Virus record (IMG/VR): IMGVR_UViG_3300029267_004162
Location: 62,001-126,000 of that record
Direction: 5' to 3' (one strand)
Length of the DNA: 64,000 bases
The notes under the pieces are model-generated. The model saw only the letters and a program-made list of their open reading frames with translations. It made no database searches and was not told the origin of the DNA. Below are positions 35,709 to 45,658 of this stretch, piece by piece. The position numbers were made by a program, and so were the translations under genes. Position 1 is the stretch's first letter; the number at the start of each line of letters is the position of its first letter.

Positions 35709-36407
35709 TTAGCCATTAACCGACTCAATCAAGATATGTAGGTCATTGAGATCGGTGAATTCATGATCTGGCCTGTGGGTGCCAATATCATAAATGCGGT
35801 TGGCTCTATTTACCCACCCACTACAAATACCCGCCCGAATTGCGCCCCCTACGTCACTATATAGTGAATCACCAACATGAATGACGTGTTCACGTCGCCA
35901 GCCAGTAAATTCAAGTGCATCCTCGAAAATGCGTGGATTGGGCTTGTAAGAACGAGAGTCCTCGGATGTTACCACCCCAGTTACTTGAATATCATGCAGT
36001 GCCAACGCCTGATCCACATCGGCTCGGTCAGTATTTGATACTATGCAAATAGGCGTGCAAAAATTCGCCAGAAAAGACCTCACTTCTGGCTGCAACGGTG
36101 GATTCTTACAAGACACGACTAAGGTTTTGACGTATGGAACTGGATCAAGATCAACGATACCTATCGCTGCCATCGTTTCCCGTAACGTTTGCACCTCGAT
36201 CTCGAATAGCGTCAGGAAGTTGCCATCGTTATGATAGTCTACGGCCCTCAAAAACTTTTCACCCCAGGCAACACTAAGCTTGGATGGTGACAATTCGATG
36301 CCCGTATCTCTAATGATGGTGGCACATACCATCTCAACAGCGGCGCGATCACCAGCCGTGAGCGTCCCATACATATCCATGAATACGCCATCAAATCTCG
36401 TCATCAT
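35709..36407 (-). CDS. HAD-superfamily (subfamily IA) hydrolase
   Basis: DMYGTL, VSN, YKPNPRIF, HVGDSLYSDVGGA motifs. Confidence 0.9.
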   Translation of the reverse strand: MMTRFDGVFMDMYGTLTAGDRAAVEMVCATIIRDTGIELSPSKLSVAWGEKFLRAVDYHNDGNFLTLFEIEVQTLRETMAAIGIVDLDPVPYVKTLVVSCKNPPLQPEVRSFLANFCTPICIVSNTDRADVDQALALHDIQVTGVVTSEDSRSYKPNPRIFEDALEFTGWRREHVIHVGDSLYSDVGGAIRAGICSGWVNRANRIYDIGTHRPDHEFTDLNDLHILIESVNG

Positions 36408-36437: not shown

Positions 36438-36812
36438 TTATGGTCTGGATTCATCAATTGCCTTTTGTTCTACCACTTGCGGACCTTTGTTGACTAGACG
36501 AATGCAACACTTTTTAAATTTCTTTCCGCTACCACAGGGACACGGGCGATTACGCAAACAATTCTTAACCTGTCTTATCTCGGTTACATCTTTATTCTGA
36601 CAAGCCTTGTCATATGCTTTCTGTAAACGAGGCTTTAAAGCCCCCTCGTCTTCTTCCCCTATAAACTCTCTCGTTACCCTTTTGGCTTCTGTTATATTTC
36701 CGGCGACTTCACTTTCAGAGGTGGTACCGCCCGGACTGGTTCTGTCAACGCTGGTTTCTTCATGCATTTTTGTTGTTCCTTTATTCGTTGTTTTTCTGCT
36801 TGTTTTAACCAA
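36438..36812 (-). CDS. SEC-C motif protein (start uncertain; overlaps TGT 3' end)
   Basis: RNRPCPCGSGKKFKKCC. Confidence 0.75.
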   Translation of the reverse strand: MVKTSRKTTNKGTTKMHEETSVDRTSPGGTTSESEVAGNITEAKRVTREFIGEEDEGALKPRLQKAYDKACQNKDVTEIRQVKNCLRNRPCPCGSGKKFKKCCIRLVNKGPQVVEQKAIDESRP

Positions 36813-38560
36813 ATTTTCTTGGCTTTTTGCTGCAGAGTCTTCTGTACCTTGGCATTCCCTTTTCCTCTACCGGTTCGTCCCCTCTTTTTCTCCACTTCTC
36901 TTTTAGAGAATTTGTGTTTAGTGGATAATTTACCAGTTGCAGTGGCCCGCAAATCCTGGATGTATGCCAAATAGCCCTTGTTATTTTTAACCTCTTTCCA
37001 CCAATTTTGGACTAACGGAGGAAACTGACCTAAAACTGCCGGGTCATCCATATTCATATAGAGAGGCATCAATTCTAAATTACTTCCCTCCCTAACCCCC
37101 GTCATCACTGGGTCTCCATCTTCATCCATTAAGTCCCGATCTTCACTAAACACGATATCAGGTTTTAAACTAGACTTCTTTCGAGTTTCAGCGTAATACA
37201 AACTACGAAATTCCTGAAAACCCGCATCCACCCCATATTCGATGGTGTGTTCTACATAAGCCACTAATTTGGCTGAACTAGTCCCGAAAGTCTTTTTGAC
37301 CCATTGATAATAATCTTCATAATCACTTTTTTTGGCCGTCTCATGAAGTAAGTTAGTGAAATTATTTAATGCCCAGATGTTATGAATAGCTAAATACGGA
37401 CCAATTTTAGTATTCTCGCTCCAGAAGGGGTCCATAAATCCAAGAGAGGAACAAACAGGACAAGCACATGTGGTTGGCAACCGACCCATGTGAGCAAAAT
37501 CATTCAGCGGAACTCCGTGGTTGTTTTTCTTGGTTTTTCCGTCTAGATGAAATTCAGTTCCAATCCGATCCGTTGAAATATATCCAGAGGGGTGTTGGAT
37601 GAGTATTTTACGGTGACCTACCCCTAGAAACTGACTGCTGGAATCGCAAGTAACCCGAATTTCCATTCGTTTAGCGAACCACGCCATAGCAGGCATAATC
37701 TTGATTCCCGATACTCCCAGGACATGGACCCATTTGGCCTCTCTTTCTGTTGCTACCAAAAGGGCTCCTCTTAGGGCGGAAGCAAAATCTTGAGAATCCC
37801 CAGAACCTGCACTAGCCCACCCAAAGAATTGTGGGCGATCAACCACATCAATCCATCGCCTTTGATCATCTGGGGTACAACTATGCACGATGTTAAAGAC
37901 CTTTAGATCAGGTCTCATGTTAGCAGTGTAACAATCAGCGAATTGCGATTGTAAATGAGAGAGGGTAGAAAAAATATCTTTTTGTCCAAAATCAGTTCCC
38001 TCTCGGGGAGGCGCGTCCAAAATCAAAGCATAGTCAGAGGTTTGGTTTTGCCATTCAATAACTGCCTTCGGATCAAGATAATCAACTGTTCTAACTCGAA
38101 GTTGATACCCTCCGGAATCCGTCATATGCACCAGGCCTGATGTCTTAGCCCAGTTGGTTCTCTGGTTTTTTCTAATTCCATATGCAGCAGAACTAAGAAT
38201 GATCCCGACTTGCCTGTTAATAGATCCTTCTTCACAGAAAGGGTCTAATTCATGAACTACGTCAAAATCCCGTGGGTCAAACGGAGCCATGGAAGGGTAA
38301 GAAACAGAACTCCGACCAAAATTGTTTAAGAACACGGTGCGATCGGGAAGATCGTATATTTGAATTTGGTTGTTTAGTTTATGATAACCCACTCCGAACC
38401 GAGAAACATGATCTATTTGTTTCTTAAACCGTACTCCAATAGACGGGTGAAAGGAAACTTCCGCTCCAGCCATGATCCAAGTAAGTCCACCCGGATCGGC
38501 GTCAGTGCCAAAAGTCCCTAGGATTTCGTCTCGTCGAGAAGTCAAAATTACTGCCTGCAT
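36692..38560 (-). CDS. TGT/DpdA-like 7-deazaguanine transglycosylase
   Basis: HMTDSGGYQ, ILDAPP, WVHVLGVSG, VTCDSSS and zinc site CACPVC...HN; N- and C-terminal extensions. Confidence 0.85.
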   Translation of the reverse strand: MQAVILTSRRDEILGTFGTDADPGGLTWIMAGAEVSFHPSIGVRFKKQIDHVSRFGVGYHKLNNQIQIYDLPDRTVFLNNFGRSSVSYPSMAPFDPRDFDVVHELDPFCEEGSINRQVGIILSSAAYGIRKNQRTNWAKTSGLVHMTDSGGYQLRVRTVDYLDPKAVIEWQNQTSDYALILDAPPREGTDFGQKDIFSTLSHLQSQFADCYTANMRPDLKVFNIVHSCTPDDQRRWIDVVDRPQFFGWASAGSGDSQDFASALRGALLVATEREAKWVHVLGVSGIKIMPAMAWFAKRMEIRVTCDSSSQFLGVGHRKILIQHPSGYISTDRIGTEFHLDGKTKKNNHGVPLNDFAHMGRLPTTCACPVCSSLGFMDPFWSENTKIGPYLAIHNIWALNNFTNLLHETAKKSDYEDYYQWVKKTFGTSSAKLVAYVEHTIEYGVDAGFQEFRSLYYAETRKKSSLKPDIVFSEDRDLMDEDGDPVMTGVREGSNLELMPLYMNMDDPAVLGQFPPLVQNWWKEVKNNKGYLAYIQDLRATATGKLSTKHKFSKREVEKKRGRTGRGKGNAKVQKTLQQKAKKIWLKQAEKQRIKEQQKCMKKPALTEPVRAVPPLKVKSPEI

Positions 38561-38571
38561 TGGTTCTTGCT

Positions 38572-39189
38572 TCAGCGACCAGAGTTAACCAGATCAATTC
38601 TAGATGATCCGGCCAGAGCACCGGTCTCCACAAGCGTAAATTCCCGAGCGGCCCTCGGTATACAAAGATTGTGTGCCGCATTACCATCGCGATCCAAGAC
38701 CGCGTGGCAATTGGGGCACGTCCATTTCCTCATACATAACGATAAAGAATCAACTTTAAACCCACAGTGATGACAAATCTTACTGGAGGGGTAAAACCGA
38801 TCCCGAACTACGAGAGATGATCCAGAGGCTTCGCATTTGTAAATTAATTGCCTGCGGAATTCACTCCAAGAGGCATCACTGATATGGCGGGCTAGAGCGT
38901 GGTTTTTGATCATGCCGGCCACGTTTAGGTCCTCGATGCAAATCTCTTGGAACATGTTGGACAACTGAGTAATCAGTTTGTGCAGGAAGTCTTGGCGGTG
39001 ATTGGTGATTCGCCAGTGATGACGAGCCAGTGTCGCTGCTGATTTCCTTCTGTTGTTAGAACCTTTTTGTTTACGGCTATGACGGCGAGACAACTTACGA
39101 AGTTTAGTCAAACCCTTGCCTAAAGCTTTGATGGGTTTCTTCTTGATGAACCTCCGAAAAGATGGGGTCGGAAAGTCTCTCGTTTACAT
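38572..39189 (-). mobile_element. tnpB: Truncated TnpB (IS200/IS605/IS607 OrfB) remnant
   Basis: SRKQKGSNNRRK, ICIEDLNVAGM, FYPSSKICHHCG, WTCPNCHAVLDRDGNAA; RuvC-I and N-terminal domains missing; in-frame ATG-TAA at 39189-39184. Confidence 0.85.
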
Positions 39190-39222: not shown

Positions 39223-40485
39223 TTACGCAACCACGCCTTGGCACATTACTGATTTGATTGGATTCCAGTCAGCCCCAACATCCGTCAGGTAGTACACTCC
39301 CGCTCCTTCAATCTTTGTTGTACATTCATACAAATTTTTAACGGATTCAGGGATGTCCTGACCAAAAGCTGTTACAAGGCAAATATCTTCGGAGGCTTCG
39401 GATGCCAAGAAATGGCCGTTTTTTGTTATCCCGGCGGTATTGGAAATTGCCCATTTATTTGTATCTTGGGGTGGAGTGCTCACTAAATATTGTAAGGCTG
39501 GGATACCATTTTTGATCAAAACCGAAGCAAAATACTTCGAGCGAACCGGGAATTCCTTCATGCCCTCCCATAACCCAAAGAGCAATTCAGTATAACTAAA
39601 AGCGCAAGCCGCCACCTGGGCTTCAGTAGGATGTGGCATACGGGTAGTGTATTCTAAGAAATACATTTCCCCATCCGGAGTAACCATACAGTTGATATCG
39701 AAAAACCCTACGTGTCCTCTTATTTTGACCTCATGTGCTCGCATGAGATCGCCAATCGGAAAGGACAGTTGATCCAATTCCGTCCAGGTCATAAATTGAC
39801 CACAAGATCCTGATTCCCCAGTCATCTCAGTGGACCTGATCTGTTTAGGGTACCGTCGCTTGTATTCTTGAATCATGGTAAAAGGTTGTAGGAATTTGCC
39901 CTCTGCCCCCATGAACCCACCGAATCCAACTTCTTCACCTTCTATAAACTCTTGGTATACGGCACCCTGAAAATTAGTGGTCTTCAAAAACAAATCGCGT
40001 TTGTACAGCACCATTGTTCGGATAGAATTGCCCGGAAATCGTTGCTTAACCACATACTGATTTTCATCGAACTTAACCACTACTTTATCACCAGGAAACA
40101 TTTGTGCTTTATCTGGATCAGTAGTCGTCCGAGGAATTTTTATCCAGGGAGCCAACTTTTTGATAAACATAGCAGCAAACCCACGATCTAGTTCTAGTCT
40201 AGCACCAAGATCAACTGCTCGAATTTGCTGAGCTTCCCCCAGATTTGAAAAATGGTCTACGTAAAAAATCAAATCCGAAGGTCGGGAAATCTCTTTTACG
40301 CCCTCCCCCAACTGCCGCCAAGTCGAATACCACCGGATAGACATTCCAGGAGGTAAAACTTTTTCTTCGTCTGGGGGTTCGGGGGCCACTACATGAAAAA
40401 ACACCTCCACCGTGTCTTTAATCAAAGCAATAGCCAAAGCAAAGGGACACCAGTCCCCCACGAAATGAACTCTCCGAGTAGTCAT
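39223..40485 (-). CDS. PurD-like ATP-grasp amine ligase
   Basis: LELDRGFA, VVVKFD, QEFIEGEEVG, QEYKR, TGESG, GFFDINCM, YFLEYTTRMPHPT: divergent GAR-synthetase pattern. Confidence 0.8.
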   Translation of the reverse strand: MTTRRVHFVGDWCPFALAIALIKDTVEVFFHVVAPEPPDEEKVLPPGMSIRWYSTWRQLGEGVKEISRPSDLIFYVDHFSNLGEAQQIRAVDLGARLELDRGFAAMFIKKLAPWIKIPRTTTDPDKAQMFPGDKVVVKFDENQYVVKQRFPGNSIRTMVLYKRDLFLKTTNFQGAVYQEFIEGEEVGFGGFMGAEGKFLQPFTMIQEYKRRYPKQIRSTEMTGESGSCGQFMTWTELDQLSFPIGDLMRAHEVKIRGHVGFFDINCMVTPDGEMYFLEYTTRMPHPTEAQVAACAFSYTELLFGLWEGMKEFPVRSKYFASVLIKNGIPALQYLVSTPPQDTNKWAISNTAGITKNGHFLASEASEDICLVTAFGQDIPESVKNLYECTTKIEGAGVYYLTDVGADWNPIKSVMCQGVVA

Positions 40486-41216
40486 ACCAATTCCTTTGGT
40501 TTAACATCATACTCAGTTGAATCCTGGCCTTCAGCAGTCATAAAAGCCCAGTGCCTACCTCGACAAGCAAAACAACCACCACAATGATCTGATTTGCTAT
40601 TTTGAAAACAAGACACCGTCGTTTCCAATGGAGCCCCCAATGCTCTACCCAAACGAACAACTGCGGCTTTGTCTAGCCCAGCTAACGCATCGATCATTCC
40701 AAAATGGACTGCTGTTCCAGGGTGATTTTCGTGATAAGGTGTAAAATCGTTGTACAAAGAGCCGATTTCTCCACGGAATTCACTAGAATCCATAGTATCA
40801 AACACACCCCCAAGAAATTCATTCGTAAAATCTTTAGTGGCCGGGTCATTCATTCCAGAACCCCCAGTATCAGCATCCATCTCGCCAGTGTATACTTTTT
40901 CCACACCTATCTTTTCAGCCATCGCCAAAGCAAGGGAGTATTGAAATAACTTGAACCCAGGAATGTAATTACTTCCTGGAATTTGCAACTTGTCCAAAAC
41001 ATCCCGCATATCCACACGAGTCAATTTAAGACCAAGAAGACATGCAATTCTATTCTGCGATTCAACGACCTTTTCTTGTCCCCATAAATTCAGCGATAAC
41101 AATAGGGGGTAGGCCCCGGCTTTCTGGAGCATAGCAGCTACCACAGTGGAATCCAAACCGCCGCTAAAAAGTACCAGAGATTTGTAAACTTGCGTATGTG
41201 TATGCGTGTGGGTCAA
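40482..41216 (-). CDS. Divergent QueC paralogue (PP-loop ATPase)
   Basis: SGGLDS and SCF...HCGGCFAC retained; canonical VPxRN replaced by IPGFK and YPDCR absent. Confidence 0.8.
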   Translation of the reverse strand: MTHTHTHTQVYKSLVLFSGGLDSTVVAAMLQKAGAYPLLLSLNLWGQEKVVESQNRIACLLGLKLTRVDMRDVLDKLQIPGSNYIPGFKLFQYSLALAMAEKIGVEKVYTGEMDADTGGSGMNDPATKDFTNEFLGGVFDTMDSSEFRGEIGSLYNDFTPYHENHPGTAVHFGMIDALAGLDKAAVVRLGRALGAPLETTVSCFQNSKSDHCGGCFACRGRHWAFMTAEGQDSTEYDVKPKELV

Positions 41217-41932
41217 ACGAGAGCCTCCGGAGTATCTTTACTCTTCTTAACCATAGCGATGAAATGCAAACAGCATTCTATTTGATTACGGGGAAACCCC
41301 AAGTGTTCAACACAATACCGAATTACTTGATCGGAATCTAAAGATTTAGTGTGCGTCCCAGCGCGACCCATGATGGTAAGTTTACCTCCACGAGTACCAG
41401 CCACCAACTGCTCCATGGATTCCTTCACAAGTCTCCTGGTGAAAATAAACCGGGAAGTGATGTGTTCTTGGGTTAGACAATAGGCCAGTTGTTTTCCATA
41501 CACTTCAGCATCAAAAGAATCGGCGTGAAATTTGTACAGGGTTTGGGGTGTAGTCGCAACACCCTGACGAATAACAGCACCATTGCATAGGGAAGCCCTC
41601 CCCGGAATAGAATAATCTTGTTCGACGCCCCAAAGATCAAAAGCAAGGAACATAAAAGAGGGGTCGATAATCCAGCGGTGGTCCACCAGCAAAATTGAGT
41701 GGGTCAATTGCCCCTTCACTTCCACAACTACTAGTTGGCCTTGTCCCAACAGTTGTTGTGCCTGTCGGGCTAAGTGAAAGCAGTTTCCTGATTTGGCCCC
41801 GTAGGCCAAATCTTTTTGAGGATAATCCGGGGTGCCTCTTCCCTTGGCAAGAGCCGTGATCTTAGAGATGGTCTCAAATAACCAGGTTTGAGGATTCAGT
41901 TTTTCTACGGCCTGTTGCAAAAAAGAAGTCAT
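41213..41932 (-). CDS. Arylamine N-acetyltransferase / transglutaminase-like Cys-His-Asp protein
   Basis: SGNCFHL...THSILLVD...WIIDPSF triad spacing like the NAT family. Confidence 0.6.
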   Translation of the reverse strand: MTSFLQQAVEKLNPQTWLFETISKITALAKGRGTPDYPQKDLAYGAKSGNCFHLARQAQQLLGQGQLVVVEVKGQLTHSILLVDHRWIIDPSFMFLAFDLWGVEQDYSIPGRASLCNGAVIRQGVATTPQTLYKFHADSFDAEVYGKQLAYCLTQEHITSRFIFTRRLVKESMEQLVAGTRGGKLTIMGRAGTHTKSLDSDQVIRYCVEHLGFPRNQIECCLHFIAMVKKSKDTPEALV

Positions 41933-41936
41933 GGTA

Positions 41937-42398
41937 TCACCTCAAATGAGGTTCGAGGGTGGGGAAAGTACCAAATCTATCTGATGCCCATTGTGCCCAC
42001 TCCTCACTGTGTCTCTGTGCGAATGGTTGGATGGCTATGCCCCCACGAGAATTAAAACACCCAATTACTTCAACATACTTGGGGGTCAACAAACTCATCA
42101 AATCTTCGACTATGACGTTGACAACTGCTTCGTGGAAAGCTCCATGATTTCTAAAACTGCCCAGGTAAAGCTTCAGAGCTTTGCTCTCGACTAAACGCTC
42201 CTGAGGAACATAATTGATGTAGATCGTACCCCAATCAGGTTGACTGGTGACGGGACAAATACTGGAGAATTCTGAACAGATCAAGCGAATCCAAAATACC
42301 GACTCCCGTGATGGGCTGGGTACATGTTCTAGAAGTTCAGGATTGTACTGTTGAGTCTGGGAACCAAATCCGGAATTACCTGAGCCTAAATGATTCAT
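41937..42398 (-). CDS. queF: NADPH-dependent preQ0 reductase (type I QueF)
   Basis: EFSSICPVTSQPD, QueF motif ESKALKLY, FHE, FNSRGGI. Confidence 0.93.
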   Translation of the reverse strand: MNHLGSGNSGFGSQTQQYNPELLEHVPSPSRESVFWIRLICSEFSSICPVTSQPDWGTIYINYVPQERLVESKALKLYLGSFRNHGAFHEAVVNVIVEDLMSLLTPKYVEVIGCFNSRGGIAIQPFAQRHSEEWAQWASDRFGTFPTLEPHLR

Positions 42399-42717
42399 TA
42401 TCTTCTGCCAACCTTTCCACTAAACTAGCGACTCGTTTGCAAATCCATTGAATATCATGATCAGTTAACTGCGATGGATCAGCTCGACCCAGTAAAAGCA
42501 GTTTTTGAAGTCGCTGCCATATAGCTTTATGAACAGCGGACTCAACGTGTTCTGAAAGCAGACGGATACTACCGGCTTCCCCCGGAACCATGTCATTACA
42601 GGTGAATAGGCAGTCCTTGTACAGACACCCGTAGTATTCACCACGTGGATTCCATGCGAAATGATCCCGGTTACAAATTGGACAACTAACAGCGGTCATT
42701 TCAGTCCTGATTGACAA
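42376..42717 (-). CDS. Small zinc-ribbon protein
   Basis: CPIC...YYGCLYKDC. Confidence 0.55.
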   Translation of the reverse strand: MSIRTEMTAVSCPICNRDHFAWNPRGEYYGCLYKDCLFTCNDMVPGEAGSIRLLSEHVESAVHKAIWQRLQKLLLLGRADPSQLTDHDIQWICKRVASLVERLAEDNESFRLR

Positions 42718-42750: not shown

Positions 42751-43539
42751 CTAACGATTAGGACACAAAATCAGACCACTGCGAATCTCCAGTTCTTCCA
42801 GCGTAACAGTGTAGTTCTGAAAGTTGGCCTTGCGAGGTGTATCCTGGGGCAAAAGATAAGCTGTCGGAGTTTCCCCTCTGATCATCACGATTTTCCAAAA
42901 AGCGGAGGGAACACAGTGGGGTTCATCTGCTCCAGGTAATTGAGGCATGCTATCGTCTTCGAATAGTGGGCCGGTGAGAATCCAGGTTTCCCCATGTTCC
43001 CATGTCAGTTCTCGCACGTAGATTTCCAATCCTAGCCAAGTTCCCTGATTGAGACCAGGATACTGAGGTGCGATGTTGCTCAGATAGTTTACTTGAGAAG
43101 CATCTTTGGACCCCCGGAAAGAAGCCAATGGAGCTAGGTGACCCCGATCAAAATCACTGGCTCCCTTGTAGTCGGCTGGTTCCAAAGTTTCAGCCGGATC
43201 CAATAGAGGATCACTTCTCCACACCCGAGCTAAATCCAGTGTTCCTCTTGTTTTACTGGGGGTTAAGTGATAAGCCACCCAGTCTGCTAGCTTGGTTTCG
43301 ATGTTAGCACTAAGGGCGTAAGATTCACGCACAACAATGACATTGGTTTCGGGGGTGCCGATTGGACAACCAAAAAGGAAATGTTCACATCGAATCTGAC
43401 CGGTGGGGAAGGGGATGGGAGCAACAGCCATTAAAGGCTTGGGGGTAGAAACGGTGAGCGTCAAGAATGCCCGGATGAGGATGATGAGACAAATCGAGCA
43501 CACAATCCACGTACAAGTCCGACGGGGTTTAGTCGACAT
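42751..43539 (-). CDS. DNA/RNA non-specific endonuclease (NucA/EndA family) with N-terminal membrane anchor
   Basis: ADWVAY, FDRGHLAP, NYLSNIAPQ..LNQGTW..LE, VPSAFWK; start moved to MSTKPRR. Confidence 0.9.
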   Translation of the reverse strand: MSTKPRRTCTWIVCSICLIILIRAFLTLTVSTPKPLMAVAPIPFPTGQIRCEHFLFGCPIGTPETNVIVVRESYALSANIETKLADWVAYHLTPSKTRGTLDLARVWRSDPLLDPAETLEPADYKGASDFDRGHLAPLASFRGSKDASQVNYLSNIAPQYPGLNQGTWLGLEIYVRELTWEHGETWILTGPLFEDDSMPQLPGADEPHCVPSAFWKIVMIRGETPTAYLLPQDTPRKANFQNYTVTLEELEIRSGLILCPNR

Positions 43540-44068
43540 GAAGTTTCTCCCAACCGGTTTCTGGATAGTACACGCGATTGCCATCAAAAATGTAAATTAG
43601 CATATAGTCGTCCCCCAAGTTGCTATTGGTGAAACATCTGTGTCCGCCTTCATAAATCAACAGGTAATTCCCACCGCCAATCCACATCCAGCTATCAGTC
43701 ACGAAATTCCACAGATACAGTTCTTTGCTAAACCACGTGTAATAGCTGTATTTCTTGCATTTTTTATAACCCGGCGGTATTACATATACTGAATCATCCC
43801 TGGTCACTTCTAAAACTGGAGTCGTTTCTATCTTTTGACACTTCCTCATTTTCAGACACTGTTTACAGGTAACGCGCTGCCAATGGGGGCTGGTACGACT
43901 CTCACTTGCCCAAAACTCCAACCCACATACCGCAAAATCATACGAGCCATAATTAACTACCCTCCCGCCTTGATATCCTCGGTCTCTACGTTTCCGCTTA
44001 TGTATAATCTTTCGCTTCTCTAAAGGCTGCGGGCTACTTACCGTCATCTCATTTCCTAACCGGGCCAT
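43529..44068 (-). CDS. Hypothetical protein
   Basis: ORF track; VTCKQC. Confidence 0.5.
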   Translation of the reverse strand: MARLGNEMTVSSPQPLEKRKIIHKRKRRDRGYQGGRVVNYGSYDFAVCGLEFWASESRTSPHWQRVTCKQCLKMRKCQKIETTPVLEVTRDDSVYVIPPGYKKCKKYSYYTWFSKELYLWNFVTDSWMWIGGGNYLLIYEGGHRCFTNSNLGDDYMLIYIFDGNRVYYPETGWEKLHVD

Positions 44069-44717
44069 AGACGGTAGGATCGGTTACCTCGGCTAACCGA
44101 AATGCCTCTCGTCGTTCCACACAGGTTCCACATTTACCGCAATGAGTGACTTGTCCTTTGTAGCATGACCATGTCTCCCCGAAGGGCACGTGTAATTCAT
44201 GACCGAGACGGCATATCCTGGTTTTATCATACCGAAGAAAGGGAGTCCAAATAGGTACCGGATAATAATGACACACATCAGCGATCTGAGACAAGGCTAT
44301 CACAAAGGCTGGTCTACAGTCTGGGTAGATGGAGTGATCCCCAGCGTGAGCAGCATAAGCCACGGCGTCATATTTCTCATTGATGCAACACCCAATAGCG
44401 ATCGATAACATGATCATATTACGATTGGGAACTACCGTGGTCTGCATATTCTTGTCAGCATAATGCCCCTCCGGCACCACCGTTGCTGAATCCATCAAAG
44501 CGTTATCGCCCAAGAGTTGACCCACGGAACGTAAGTCTAAGATATGATGGGGACACTTATACTCGATTGCCAAAGCGGCTGCGGCTTCGATCTCCCGTCG
44601 TCCGTGTTTCTGACCGTAATTGAAGGTCAAACACTGACAAGTATGGCCTTGTGCCAATAAACTGGCCAGAAGTACAGTAGAATCCATCCCACCGGATAGG
44701 GATACAATCACTTTCAC
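44049..44717 (-). CDS. queC: 7-cyano-7-deazaguanine (preQ0) synthase
   Basis: SGGMDS, YGQKH, VVPNRN, YPDCR, TWSCY...HCGKCGTC; GTG start at 44717 with GGAGG SD. Confidence 0.95.
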   Translation of the reverse strand: MKVIVSLSGGMDSTVLLASLLAQGHTCQCLTFNYGQKHGRREIEAAAALAIEYKCPHHILDLRSVGQLLGDNALMDSATVVPEGHYADKNMQTTVVPNRNMIMLSIAIGCCINEKYDAVAYAAHAGDHSIYPDCRPAFVIALSQIADVCHYYPVPIWTPFLRYDKTRICRLGHELHVPFGETWSCYKGQVTHCGKCGTCVERREAFRLAEVTDPTVYGPVRK

Positions 44718-45658
44718 TGGGGTGCCTCCGCCAACATCGGAATTTCCGAGGACACGGCTCGAAGAATATCGCGTTTGTATTCCCCTGCCACATCGGGAGT
44801 CCCCAGGGACAAAGATTTGCACTGCTTTTCATAAGCGGTTTGCATCAGAAACAGGATCATCAACGTTATGGGATCAAACTTCTTAAATCCAGGTAGGGAC
44901 CATACTTCTACCAGACGTAGTTGGTCCGTCTCCTGGAAATATAAGATCAACCCCAGTGGTTTGCCCTCGAATTCGAGTACCAGAGCCTCTGCGTGAATTC
45001 CGGCCAGAATCAAATAGTCCCAACGTGATTTGTTGGTCGTCGCCCATTTGGTAAGAGGGGTCTCTTTTAGAGGCGAAGTAAGATGTTGCAATTCCCCAAA
45101 CCAAAAATCTGGGGTCTTTGGCTGACTTACCACCTTGGGGCTAAACTTTCGCCAGGTCGTTCGAGTATAACGACAATCAGTACCTTTCAAGTGGCTCTCA
45201 AAATCAGAAGCGGCAAGAGGTAAAATCAATTCTGTCTGAGTCGGAATCCCCTCCCCATACAGCAGCTTGATCAGAGATTCAAAATCGGGGCCACTTAAAG
45301 CCAGGAGGTTTCTAGTCAAGCCGAGGTTGTTCAAAGGAAAGACTAGCAGTGGAGTGTAGCCATCATCCTTCATCTCTGATACACGAACAATGCCACTCTG
45401 CTCCCGTTTAGCAATTAGATGAAGGATACCGGGTGGAACATCCAAATTAATAGGGTTTAGGCCCTGAATTCCCCTCATTAAAACATCAGACCATTCTTGG
45501 TGGTGTTCAACCAAAAAACACCGGCCATCACGTTCTACTCGTGTACCTAGCTGGGGACGAGGGGGTTTATCCCGTTTAACAACCAATCGTTTAGATCGTG
45601 TTTTCTTCTTAACGGCTGGTTTTGATGGTAATGACGACGACGTCATGTTATCTCTCAA
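44714..45658 (-). CDS. GNAT/Fem-like acyltransferase-domain protein
   Basis: C-terminal LVLEFEGKPLGLILY...LMILFLMQTAYEKQCKSLSLG...EYKR; GTGA-coupled to queC. Confidence 0.55.
   Translation of the reverse strand: MRDNMTSSSLPSKPAVKKKTRSKRLVVKRDKPPRPQLGTRVERDGRCFLVEHHQEWSDVLMRGIQGLNPINLDVPPGILHLIAKREQSGIVRVSEMKDDGYTPLLVFPLNNLGLTRNLLALSGPDFESLIKLLYGEGIPTQTELILPLAASDFESHLKGTDCRYTRTTWRKFSPKVVSQPKTPDFWFGELQHLTSPLKETPLTKWATTNKSRWDYLILAGIHAEALVLEFEGKPLGLILYFQETDQLRLVEVWSLPGFKKFDPITLMILFLMQTAYEKQCKSLSLGTPDVAGEYKRDILRAVSSEIPMLAEAPQ

What the first reader, a model, noticed from the sequence alone, without database searches (positions are those of the whole stretch)
36692..38560. Extended TGT-like enzyme whose target (DNA or tRNA) is unclear
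Seen: 622 aa, with tRNA-TGT-like DSGGYQ and CxCxxC...H zinc site, about 130 extra N-terminal residues and a long helical, Lys-rich C-terminus. The usual GxxQG of bacterial TGT appears as NIVHS. Inference: a distinct transglycosylase subfamily with an altered base pocket, possibly fitted to a bulkier preQ1 derivative.
Basis: partly seen in the sequence, partly recalled or inferred. Interest (0 to 1): 0.65.

Follow-up and report, generated by a model that had tools for sequence, protein, structure and literature searches.

The report
Jumbo-phage DNA deazaguanine transglycosylase, divergent type
This gene of an uncultured 262-kb phage encodes a divergent TGT-fold base-exchange enzyme from a large, untested phage family outside all named DpdA groups, and it most likely swaps guanine in the phage's DNA for a preQ1-type 7-deazaguanine made by neighbouring genes.

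Summary
The 622-aa ORF is real and has the TGT fold (AF2 pLDDT 82; Z 21-24 to ArcTGT/TGT). It keeps all three catalytic-type Asp (D148, D182, D306) and the Zn site (C365/C367/C370/H393).

It belongs to none of the characterised clades. Bacterial TGT, ArcTGT, bDpdA, DpdA1, DpdA3, DpdA4 and Cap10 were each tested and not met. DpdA2 is the nearest named group, matching over the core only (E 1e-13).

It sits in a large uncharacterised family (1,192 clusters at 50% identity), mostly in jumbo-phage replication modules. Members are often embedded in FolE/QueD/QueE/QueC clusters (Motura, L011, L016) or lie next to QueC paralogues. One member is in Phage NCTB, which was listed in 2019 as having que genes but no DpdA.

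In the window the gene ends a co-directional cluster of QueC, QueF, a second QueC-like gene and a PurD-like ATP-grasp ligase. The best reading is a DpdA-type DNA transglycosylase inserting preQ1 or a derivative; DNA as the target is inferred, not shown.

The G-to-S change is unique among 108 members, and the adjacent pocket loop also deviates. The "130 extra N-terminal residues" is overstated: about 46-53 versus TGT/ArcTGT. The Lys-rich tail is specific to this protein.

The parts
36692..38560 (-). TGT-superfamily gene (622 aa), proposed DNA 7-deazaguanine transglycosylase
   Evidence: ORF; family HMM E 5e-109; AF2 pLDDT 81.7, pTM 0.83; Z 23.6 to ArcTGT, 21.1 to TGT
38201..38560 (-). Residues 1-120: beta-rich N-terminal region, equal to the TGT N-terminus plus family-specific insertions (D73, R74, D100 nearly invariant)
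38102..38119 (-). DSGGYQ (148-153); D148 aligns with ArcTGT D95 / TGT D102
   Evidence: D148, G150, G151 invariant in 108 sequences; alignment to 1iq8
38015..38017 (-). D182 in L-D-x-P, aligned with the base-binding Asp of ArcTGT/TGT
   Evidence: invariant; alignment
37880..37894 (-). NIVHS (223-227): the family N-I-x-H-G motif; H226 sits at the TGT Gln position; S227 is unique
   Evidence: N 104/108; H 99 and Q 9; G 107 and S 1
37787..37816 (-). Pocket loop A249-D258 (ASAGSGDSQD): G251A and a one-residue insertion at 254
   Evidence: aligned with AIGGLSIGE of T. maritima TGT
37643..37645 (-). D306 in T-x-D-S-S, aligned with the nucleophile Asp (ArcTGT D249 / TGT D280)
   Evidence: invariant; alignment
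37382..37468 (-). Zinc site C365, C367, C370 ... H393
   Evidence: aligned with PCSCPVCS...LHN of ArcTGT
36929..37231 (-). Residues 444-544: helical C-terminal region, present in the family but weakly conserved
36695..36928 (-). Residues 545-622: Lys-rich basic tail (pI 10.8), specific to this protein at this length
38572..39111 (-). Truncated TnpB/Cas12f-like remnant between the ATP-grasp gene and the target gene
39223..40485 (-). PurD-like ATP-grasp ligase (420 aa), candidate amide-forming tailoring enzyme
   Evidence: TIGR00877 1e-9, far below cut-off; PDB PurD 2yw2 3e-5; its only homologue lies in another phage QueC cluster
40482..41216 (-). Second QueC-like PP-loop enzyme (QueC2)
41213..41932 (-). 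239-aa protein of unknown function, overlapping QueC2 by 4 nt
   Evidence: no hits
41937..42398 (-). Unimodular QueF (preQ0 to preQ1 reductase)
   Evidence: TIGR03139 139 bits against a cut-off of 86.9; Pfam QueF 1.5e-32
42751..43587 (-). Non-specific DNA/RNA endonuclease inside the cluster
   Evidence: PF01223 9e-40
44049..44822 (-). Canonical QueC (preQ0 synthase)
   Evidence: TIGR00364 183 bits against a cut-off of 150

Best explanation
The gene encodes an active, zinc-containing TGT-fold base-exchange enzyme of a large, mostly jumbo-phage family. It acts as the phage's DpdA-type DNA transglycosylase. After replication it removes guanine from phage DNA through a covalent Asp-deoxyribose intermediate (D306 as nucleophile, D148 as acid/base, D182 and H226 reading the base). 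It then installs a 7-deazaguanine made by the neighbouring genes. QueC makes preQ0 from CDG, which comes from the host or from genes elsewhere in the 262-kb genome. QueF reduces preQ0 to preQ1. The base is probably preQ1, perhaps further tailored before or after insertion by QueC2 and/or the PurD-like ATP-grasp ligase. The basic C-terminal tail probably adds non-specific DNA affinity. The modified DNA would resist host restriction, and possibly the phage's own non-specific nuclease. Shown: fold, conserved active-site and Zn residues, family membership, gene contexts. Inferred: DNA as substrate, identity of the base, role of the tail.
For: Fold and chemistry: AF2 model pLDDT 81.7; Z 23.6 to ArcTGT, 21.1 to TGT, 18.3 to bDpdA; D148, D182, D306 and H393 invariant and C365/C367/C370 nearly invariant in 108 sequences, aligned to the catalytic and Zn residues of ArcTGT. 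Family context: full-length members lie inside QueD/QueC/QueE/FolE clusters in L011, L016 and Motura (L020). In the window's own clade, L029 has TGT-like...QueC-DUF5591(ArcS-type)-QueC, L031 has QueC directly upstream, and L032/33 have QueC about 9 kb away. Phage NCTB encodes FolE/QueD/QueE/QueC, was listed without any DpdA in 2019, and carries a full-length member at E 4e-131. The gene usually sits between primase and sigma factor/RecA, a DNA-metabolism module. Three of 64 members carry a Ros/MucR DNA-binding domain and three carry inteins. Window context: QueC and QueF both score above their curated cut-offs, with QueC2 and the ATP-grasp co-directional and tightly packed. No tRNA gene occurs in the 64-kb window. 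Literature: every tested phage TGT homologue encoded with que genes inserts a 7-deazaguanine into DNA (PMC6884629, PMC10516641), and Motura's enzyme was predicted to do so (PMC7824862).
Against: No member of this family has been assayed. Several members (GR7B, Lauda, L010/L012) have no que gene within 8-10 kb, so the family's link to deazaguanine is frequent but not universal in the DNA I could see. FolE, QueD and QueE were not found in the 64-kb window. A TnpB remnant separates the gene from the que genes. The closest solved structures are tRNA enzymes (ArcTGT, TGT) and not bDpdA. The unique G227S and the altered pocket loop could mean a different substrate or reduced activity.
Confidence: 0.68

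Rival explanations
1. It is a phage-encoded tRNA-guanine transglycosylase that inserts preQ1 or preQ0 into host or phage tRNAs to tune translation.
For: The closest solved structures and sequence profiles are tRNA enzymes: ArcTGT Z 23.6 and E 9e-12, TGT Z 21.1. It keeps the Zn subdomain that phage DpdA1, DpdA2 and DpdA3 references lack. DSGGYQ is identical to the bacterial TGT motif. Jumbo phages often carry many tRNAs.
Against: It scores far below the curated cut-offs of TGT (13 vs 26.3 bits) and TgtA (18 vs 350 bits). It has no ArcTGT C-terminal PUA-type domains; only chain residues 9-355 of 577 align. There is no tRNA gene in the window. The family sits in DNA replication modules and que clusters like the DpdAs. 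bDpdA also keeps the CxCxxC motif, so Zn does not imply tRNA. No phage TGT homologue has been shown to act on tRNA in the papers read.
Confidence: 0.08
2. It works like Cap10 of type IV CBASS: together with the QueC-like QueC2 (a Cap9 analogue) it handles a 7-deazaguanine conjugated to a protein or another amine, not free base exchange into DNA.
For: A QueC-like paralogue distinct from canonical QueC lies 2 kb away, weakly resembles QatC, and recurs near family members (L032/33). Cap9 shows that QueC-like enzymes can ligate CDG to amines. The Cap10 structure matches at Z 16.1. One subclade member (P0009) lies in a defence-island-like element.
Against: No PADLOC Cap10/CBASS hit. Cap10 is the most distant TGT-superfamily structure. 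There is no CD-NTase or M(G/S)G(G/S)GG-tailed partner among the 20 neighbours scanned. Cap10 is about 335 aa with remodelled nucleic-acid surfaces, whereas this protein has an added basic tail.
Confidence: 0.05
3. It exchanges or excises a different base, or has a non-catalytic or regulatory DNA-binding role in the replication module, unrelated to 7-deazaguanines. The que genes nearby would then serve another DpdA or only tRNA-related host takeover.
For: Several family members have no que genes within 8-10 kb and sit in a conserved primase-sigma-RecA module. The pocket differs from TGT (His for Gln; variable GG loop in the window's clade). A TnpB remnant separates the gene from the que genes.
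Against: All catalytic and base-binding Asp residues are invariant across 108 sequences, which argues for catalysis on a guanine-like base. Family members recur with que genes in both major clades. No other TGT/DpdA-like gene was detected in the window, and the phage encodes QueC plus QueF, whose products need an insertase.
Confidence: 0.12

Closest known systems
DpdA2 (Vibrio phage nt-1 YP_008125322; inserts preQ0, and for VH7D preQ1, into DNA)
   Same: Nearest named phage subfamily: hhalign probability 96.7%, E 3e-10; family HMM 1.6e-13; Foldseek 5e-10. Shares the DSGG-Q, H-G, H-x-L-G and D-S-S-x-H motifs, a similar length (464 aa) and a location next to que genes.
   Different: The match covers only the core (184 columns). 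DpdA2 has no CxCxxC zinc motif and no N-terminal beta-rich extension (DSGG at 76 vs 148). It scores 39 bits against 240-540 bits for true members.
Archaeosine tRNA-guanine transglycosylase (ArcTGT, PDB 1iq8)
   Same: Best solved-structure match (Z 23.6, 313 residues, rmsd 3.3) and best profile match (E 9e-12). Catalytic Asp triad and CxCxxC...H zinc site are aligned.
   Different: 14-15% identity. NCBIfam TgtA scores 18 bits against a cut-off of 350. The C1/C2/PUA tRNA-binding domains are absent. His replaces Gln in the pocket. Phage genomic context.
Bacterial DpdA (DNA preQ0 insertase, PDB 7ui4)
   Same: TGT fold with a retained Cys motif; acts on DNA. Z 18.3 over 320 residues; profile E 1e-6.
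   Different: No PADLOC DpdA hit for the window protein. No DpdB or Dpd restriction genes among the neighbours. More distant than ArcTGT and TGT.
TGT-like proteins of Achromobacter phage Motura and Phage NCTB (same family, untested)
   Same: Same family by HMM (Motura 7.5e-75; NCTB 3.6e-131) and by structure (Motura Foldseek 1e-24). Same N-terminal region, NIxHG motif and zinc site. Motura's gene lies inside QueD-QueC-[TGT]-QueE-FolE, and Iyer et al. 2021 predicted it to put a deazaguanine into DNA.
   Different: They are in the other major clade of the family, at 16-23% identity. They have no QueF, so a preQ0-type base is expected. They lack the long Lys-rich tail and have Gly at position 227.
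DpdA1, DpdA3, DpdA4 and Cap10
   Same: Same superfamily and fold (Foldseek/VIA hits).
   Different: DpdA1 (9g): hhalign 41%, HMM 1.6e-3. DpdA3 (phiST, 259 aa): hhalign 2.7%, HMM 0.7. DpdA4 (HVTV1_69): no HMM hit, hhalign 0.3%, and no PF20314 hit in the window protein or the 63 other members scanned. Cap10: Z 16.1, no PADLOC hit, no CD-NTase partner.

Membership tests
TGT superfamily (fold level) | (beta/alpha)8 TGT barrel with inserted Zn subdomain | tested here: met
   Z 21-24 to TGT/ArcTGT over 300-326 residues, well above generic TIM barrels at Z <=12.8
TGT superfamily (fold level) | Catalytic/base-binding Asp triad and CxCxxC...H zinc ligands | tested here: met
   D148, D182, D306, C365, C367, C370, H393 conserved and aligned to ArcTGT residues
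Bacterial tRNA-guanine transglycosylase (Tgt, PF01702) | Score above Pfam gathering threshold; GxxQGG and GGLAVGE pocket motifs | tested here: not met
   13.2 bits against a cut-off of 26.3; NIVHS and ASAGSGDS in place of the motifs
Archaeal TgtA (TIGR00432) | Equivalog score; C-terminal C1/C2/PUA domains | tested here: not met
   18.2 bits against a cut-off of 350; structural alignment ends at ArcTGT residue 355 of 577
Bacterial DpdA (Dpd system) | Match to the DpdA model; dpdB and dpdC-K neighbours | tested here: not met
   No PADLOC DpdA hit; none of the 20 neighbours scanned has a Pfam domain suggesting a Dpd-system partner, though no DpdB-specific model was run; profile to 7ui4 only 1e-6
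Phage DpdA1 (9g type) | Sequence relationship to 9g DpdA; about 300 aa, no Zn motif | tested here: not met
   hhalign 40.7%; family HMM 1.6e-3; no PHROG hit
Phage DpdA2 (nt-1 type) | Full-length relationship to nt-1 DpdA2 | tested here: not met
   Core-only homology; DpdA2 lacks the Zn motif and N-terminal extension; BLASTP E 0.003. It is the nearest named group, so a sister relationship is likely
Phage DpdA3 (phiST / Campylobacter type) | Relationship to phiST CGPG_00065 (259 aa) | tested here: not met
   hhalign 2.7%; HMM E 0.71; Foldseek 3e-3. Only one DpdA3 sequence was available
DpdA4 (archaeal virus, DUF6610) | PF20314 match; relationship to HVTV1_69 | tested here: not met
   No PF20314 hit in the window protein or the 63 other members scanned; no HMM hit; hhalign 0.3%
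Cap10 (type IV CBASS) | CD-NTase partner with N-terminal Gly-rich tail; Cap9; CBASS operon | tested here: not met
   No PADLOC hit; no CD-NTase in the neighbours; most distant TGT-type structure, Z 16.1
Unnamed jumbo-phage TGT-like family (Motura / NCTB / GR7B type) | Full-length HMM match including the N-terminal region (D73-R74, D100), DSGGxQ, NIxHG, HxLG, TxDSS, CxCPxC...HN | tested here: met
   E 5e-109 over HMM positions 6-491; every motif present except G227S; nested in the tree with SH-aLRT 95
DNA 7-deazaguanine transglycosylase (functional class) | Guanine exchange on DNA; modified deoxynucleoside in phage DNA | not testable with these tools
   Needs LC-MS/MS or exchange assays; supported only by gene context

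The most novel reading that the evidence does not exclude
The cluster makes a 7-deazaguanine not yet described in DNA. One route is an amino-acylated preQ1, for example glycyl-preQ1, formed when the PurD-like ATP-grasp ligase joins an amino-acid carboxylate to the preQ1 aminomethyl group. Another is an N-substituted 7-amido-7-deazaguanine made from CDG by QueC2 or the ATP-grasp. The uniquely altered pocket of this transglycosylase (G227S, G251A, insertion at 254) would accommodate that bulkier base. The family as a whole would then be a sixth, zinc-retaining DpdA subfamily that is the main insertase of jumbo phages.
Probability: 0.2. Interest if true: 0.8.

Novelty: new variant of a known kind. 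Interest (0 to 1): 0.55.

Why it matters
7-Deazaguanine DNA modifications let phages evade restriction enzymes and CRISPR cleavage in vitro, and their insertases (DpdA) are currently sorted into five subfamilies. This gene belongs to a much larger group (more than 1,000 clusters at 50% identity) that meets none of those definitions. The group keeps the ancestral zinc site and is typical of jumbo phages. It explains at least one phage (NCTB) that had a full preQ0 pathway but no recognised insertase. Testing one member would assign function to a widespread 'hypothetical protein' of jumbo-phage replication modules. In this phage the association with QueF, a second QueC-like enzyme and a PurD-like ligase points to a candidate pathway for a new preQ1- or CDG-derived hypermodified base. 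The same ligase recurs in an unrelated phage's Gat-QueC/QueC cluster.

Tried and rejected
- **PHROGs and PADLOC** gave no hit for the protein.
- **Megablast** of 20 kb of the window against 50,697 phage records found nothing, so the phage has no sequenced close relative.
- **DpdA3 and DpdA4 membership** was rejected by direct comparison. NC_021328 proved to be HGTV-1, not HVTV-1; the comparison was redone with NC_020158.
- **Supplementary tables of the 2023 DpdA3/4 paper** are not held. I could not check whether its authors placed NCTB or Motura proteins in one of their subfamilies.
The two genome-contig scans that ran found no relative. The patterns were narrow, so this is weak evidence of absence from cellular genomes.
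- **Closest relatives** P0002, P0004, P0008 and P0014 lie on contigs of 4 kb or less, which give no context.
- **A TGT/DpdA gene in the second ATP-grasp locus (L034):** none found within 10 kb. A 268-aa candidate was rejected (hhalign 0.3%; it looks like a SAM methyltransferase).
- **The 239-aa neighbour** is not related to the DUF5591/ArcS-type protein of L029 and has no PDB relative.
- **The C-terminal region 425-548** is too weakly conserved (16% column identity) to justify a separate fold search, so no DNA-binding fold was established for it.
- **Promoter and terminator scans** were uninformative.
- **The GyrA-like protein** gave only distant matches of about 32-34% identity to diverse phages, so host and lineage remain unassigned.
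- **Complex prediction** was not used, because no protein-protein binding claim is made.
Full report
**Observation.** The ORF at 36692-38560 on the minus strand is real and 622 aa long. The window is phage-like: every sizeable ORF is tightly packed on the minus strand and there is no tRNA gene. It comes from IMG/VR contig UViG_3300029267_004162, 262,650 bp, which has no close sequenced relative.

Direct library scans barely see the protein. Pfam TGT gives E 0.047 (13 bits against a cut-off of 26.3). NCBIfam TgtA gives 7e-4 (18 bits against 350). PHROGs and PADLOC give nothing.

- DSGGYQ at residues 148-153
- NIVHS at 223-227
- C365-x-C367-x-x-C370 followed by H393
- a C-terminal 78 residues with 32% K+R and pI 10.8

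**Fold and active site.** A sensitive profile search found 1,192 cluster representatives at E <= 1e-3, of which 742 are at <= 1e-10. Most are 450-550 aa. An AlphaFold2 model built on 108 of them is confident (pLDDT 81.7, pTM 0.83).

Against one representative per PDB cluster, the model ranks as follows:

| Structure | Z | Aligned residues |
|---|---|---|
| ArcTGT | 23.6 | 313 |
| Bacterial TGT | 21.1 | 302 |
| QTRT2 | 19.3 | 318 |
| Bacterial DNA preQ0 insertase DpdA | 18.3 | 320 |
| Cap10 | 16.1 | 279 |
| Generic TIM barrels | <= 12.8 | about 190-250 |

A family profile against PDB sequences gives the same order for the chains it detects: ArcTGT 9e-12, DpdA 1e-6, TGT about 3e-5; Cap10 was not detected. 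In those alignments D148, D182 and D306 fall on the two base/acid Asp residues and the nucleophile Asp of ArcTGT, and the Cys/His residues fall on its zinc ligands. Across 108 family members D148, G150, G151, D182, H279, D306 and H393 are invariant, and C365, C367 and C370 are nearly so. The protein therefore has everything expected of an active guanine-exchange enzyme.

**N-terminus.** The structural alignment begins at model residue 11-17 against TGT/ArcTGT residue 9-11. The '130 extra N-terminal residues' are therefore mostly the normal TGT N-terminal region enlarged by insertions. The true excess is about 46-53 residues versus TGT/ArcTGT and about 72-76 versus phage DpdA1 and DpdA2. The region is a family feature, with D73, R74 and D100 nearly invariant.

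**Which family?** I fetched one reference for each named phage subfamily and compared it with the family alignment and HMM.

| Reference | hhalign probability | Family HMM E-value | Other |
|---|---|---|---|
| DpdA1 (phage 9g) | 41% | 1.6e-3 | |
| DpdA2 (nt-1 YP_008125322) | 96.7% (E 3e-10) | 1.6e-13 | 184 core columns only; no zinc motif; no N-terminal extension |
| DpdA3 (phiST CGPG_00065, 259 aa) | 2.7% | 0.7 | |
| DpdA4 (HVTV1_69) | 0.3% | no hit | no PF20314 hit in the window protein or the 63 other members scanned |

True family members score 240-540 bits. The viral structure library agrees: family members score 1e-22 to 1e-27 (Motura 1e-24), then nt-1 DpdA2 at 5e-10, DpdA1-type at about 1e-6, phiST DpdA3 at 3e-3, and a haloviral DpdA4-like protein at 0.06. 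The protein is thus outside every characterised clade. DpdA2 is the nearest named one.

**What the family does: context evidence.**
- In cultured jumbo phages (Vibrio GR7B, P. putida Lauda, Phage NCTB) the gene sits in a conserved module of primase, TGT-like gene, small ORF, sigma factor and RecA/UvsX.
- Full-length members L011, L016 and L020 (Achromobacter phage Motura) are embedded among QueD, QueC, QueE and FolE.
- A maximum-likelihood tree puts the window protein in a five-member subclade (SH-aLRT 95) inside a 24-row clade. Motura, L011, L016, GR7B and Lauda are in the other major clade.
- Within the window's own clade, L029 has TGT-like, sigma factor, QueC, DUF5591 (ArcS-type) and QueC. 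L031 has QueC immediately upstream. L032/33 have a QueC2-type gene about 9 kb away, plus an Fpg/Nei glycosylase.
- Phage NCTB was listed in 2019 with FolE/QueD/QueE/QueC but empty DpdA and DpdA2 columns. Its gene BN7874_014 is a full-length member at E 4e-131.
- Three of 64 members carry Ros/MucR DNA-binding domains and three carry inteins.
- Iyer et al. 2021 had already inferred a deazaguanine system plus a DNA-directed transglycosylase in Motura.
- I found no experimental test of any member.

**The window's cluster.** Reading upstream from the gene:
- a TnpB remnant
- a PurD-like ATP-grasp ligase
- a second QueC-like enzyme with intact PP-loop and Cys motifs
- a 239-aa unknown protein
- a unimodular QueF above its curated cut-off
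- a non-specific endonuclease
- canonical QueC above its cut-off

No FolE, QueD or QueE was found in the 64 kb. CDG must therefore come from the host or from elsewhere in the genome. QueF implies that preQ1 is made, as in the known dPreQ1 phages Dp-1 and HVTV-1, whose QueF proteins are among the closest phage homologues.

The ATP-grasp ligase has only one detectable homologue in the 5.8-billion-protein database (36% identity). That homologue lies in a different phage, again in a cluster with Gat-QueC, QueC, a glycosyltransferase and a radical-SAM enzyme. This independent recurrence suggests the ligase tailors a 7-deazaguanine. Its chemistry (carboxylate plus amine, as in PurD) would fit acylation of the preQ1 amine or amidation of CDG. 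That is inference only.

**Pocket.**
- N is present in 104 of 108 members.
- His sits at the TGT Gln position in 99 members and Gln in 9.
- Gly227 is present in 107 of 108. The single exception is the window's Ser.
- In the next pocket loop, which aligns with TGT's GGLAVGE, the window protein has G251A (a minority state) and a one-residue insertion that 103 of 108 members lack.

So the pocket is unusual even within the family. This is compatible with a non-standard base but does not prove one.

**Tail.** Relatives end soon after the helical C-terminal region, some with short basic ends. The 78-residue Lys-rich tail is specific to this protein. Its last 76 nt overlap a small ORF with a real SEC-C zinc motif.

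**Rivals.**
- A tRNA-modifying role is suggested by the closest solved structures. The genomic contexts and the lack of ArcTGT tRNA-binding domains argue against it.
- A Cap9/Cap10-like protein-conjugation role is suggested by the QueC2 paralogue. It lacks the defining CD-NTase partner, and Cap10 is the most distant structural relative.
- A role unrelated to deazaguanines remains possible for the members that have no que genes nearby.

**Verdict.** This is a divergent member of a large, uncharacterised, zinc-retaining, mostly jumbo-phage branch of the TGT superfamily. It is most likely a DpdA-type DNA transglycosylase inserting preQ1 or a derivative (confidence about 0.68). It is a new variant of a known kind and not a categorically new system. 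The most interesting open possibility is a new tailored 7-deazaguanine.

Noticed in passing
window 38572-39111 (-): C-terminal ~40% of a TnpB/Cas12f-like protein (OrfB_IS605 + TNB domains; profile positions 259-425 of 458). It is wedged between the ATP-grasp gene and the TGT-like gene, and its stop codon lies 11 nt before the TGT-like ATG. Probably a decayed IS605-family insertion.
   Followed up: partly
window 36438-36812 (-): Small ORF with a real SEC-C zinc motif (CPCGSGKKFKKCC, PF02810 E 1.6e-8). Its likely ATG at 36767 has an AGGA upstream, so it overlaps the last 76 nt of the TGT-like ORF in another frame.
   Followed up: partly
window 39223-40485 (-); L034/L035 10001-11209: Distant PurD-like ATP-grasp ligase. 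Its only detectable homologue (36% identity) lies in an unrelated phage contig within a Gat-QueC / QueC / glycosyltransferase / radical-SAM cluster next to DNA polymerase and gyrase genes. Candidate new 7-deazaguanine tailoring enzyme.
   Followed up: partly
window 40482-41216 (-) and 44049-44822 (-): Two QueC paralogues of different types, both with intact SGGxDS and Cys motifs. The second type weakly resembles QatC and recurs near family members (L032/33).
   Followed up: partly
window 42751-43587 (-): Non-specific DNA/RNA endonuclease (PF01223, 9e-40) inside the que cluster. It might degrade unmodified host DNA.
   Followed up: no
window 41213-41932 (-), 42376-42717 (-), 43529-44068 (-), 44714-45658 (-): Four ORFs interleaved with the que genes have no significant match in any library searched. 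The 314-aa one has a marginal GNAT hit (E 0.03).
   Followed up: partly
L027 7177-12567: P0009, a member of the window's five-protein subclade, lies in an integrative-element or defence-island-like context (two integrases, HigB toxin, RT-trypsin). It sits in a tight five-gene operon with a DUF5131 protein and three unknown proteins, so the family is not restricted to lytic phages.
   Followed up: no
L013-L023: A shorter sister group (393-433 aa, no N-terminal extension, most without the zinc motif; family HMM 117-150 bits) always lies next to FolE/QueE/QueD/QueC genes. It may bridge this family and DpdA2.
   Followed up: partly
L032/L033 13845-14663: An Fpg/Nei-type DNA glycosylase is encoded 2.5 kb from the TGT-like gene in a phage replication module.
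   Followed up: no
family members in alignment A3: Three of 64 members contain inteins with LAGLIDADG domains, and three carry a Ros/MucR zinc-finger DNA-binding domain.
   Followed up: no
window 35709-36407 (-): A HAD-family hydrolase lies just downstream of the target gene (NCBIfam hits below curated cut-offs; haloacid dehalogenase type II 6e-16, YjjG-type nucleotidase 2e-13). A role in nucleotide or base metabolism is possible.
   Followed up: no
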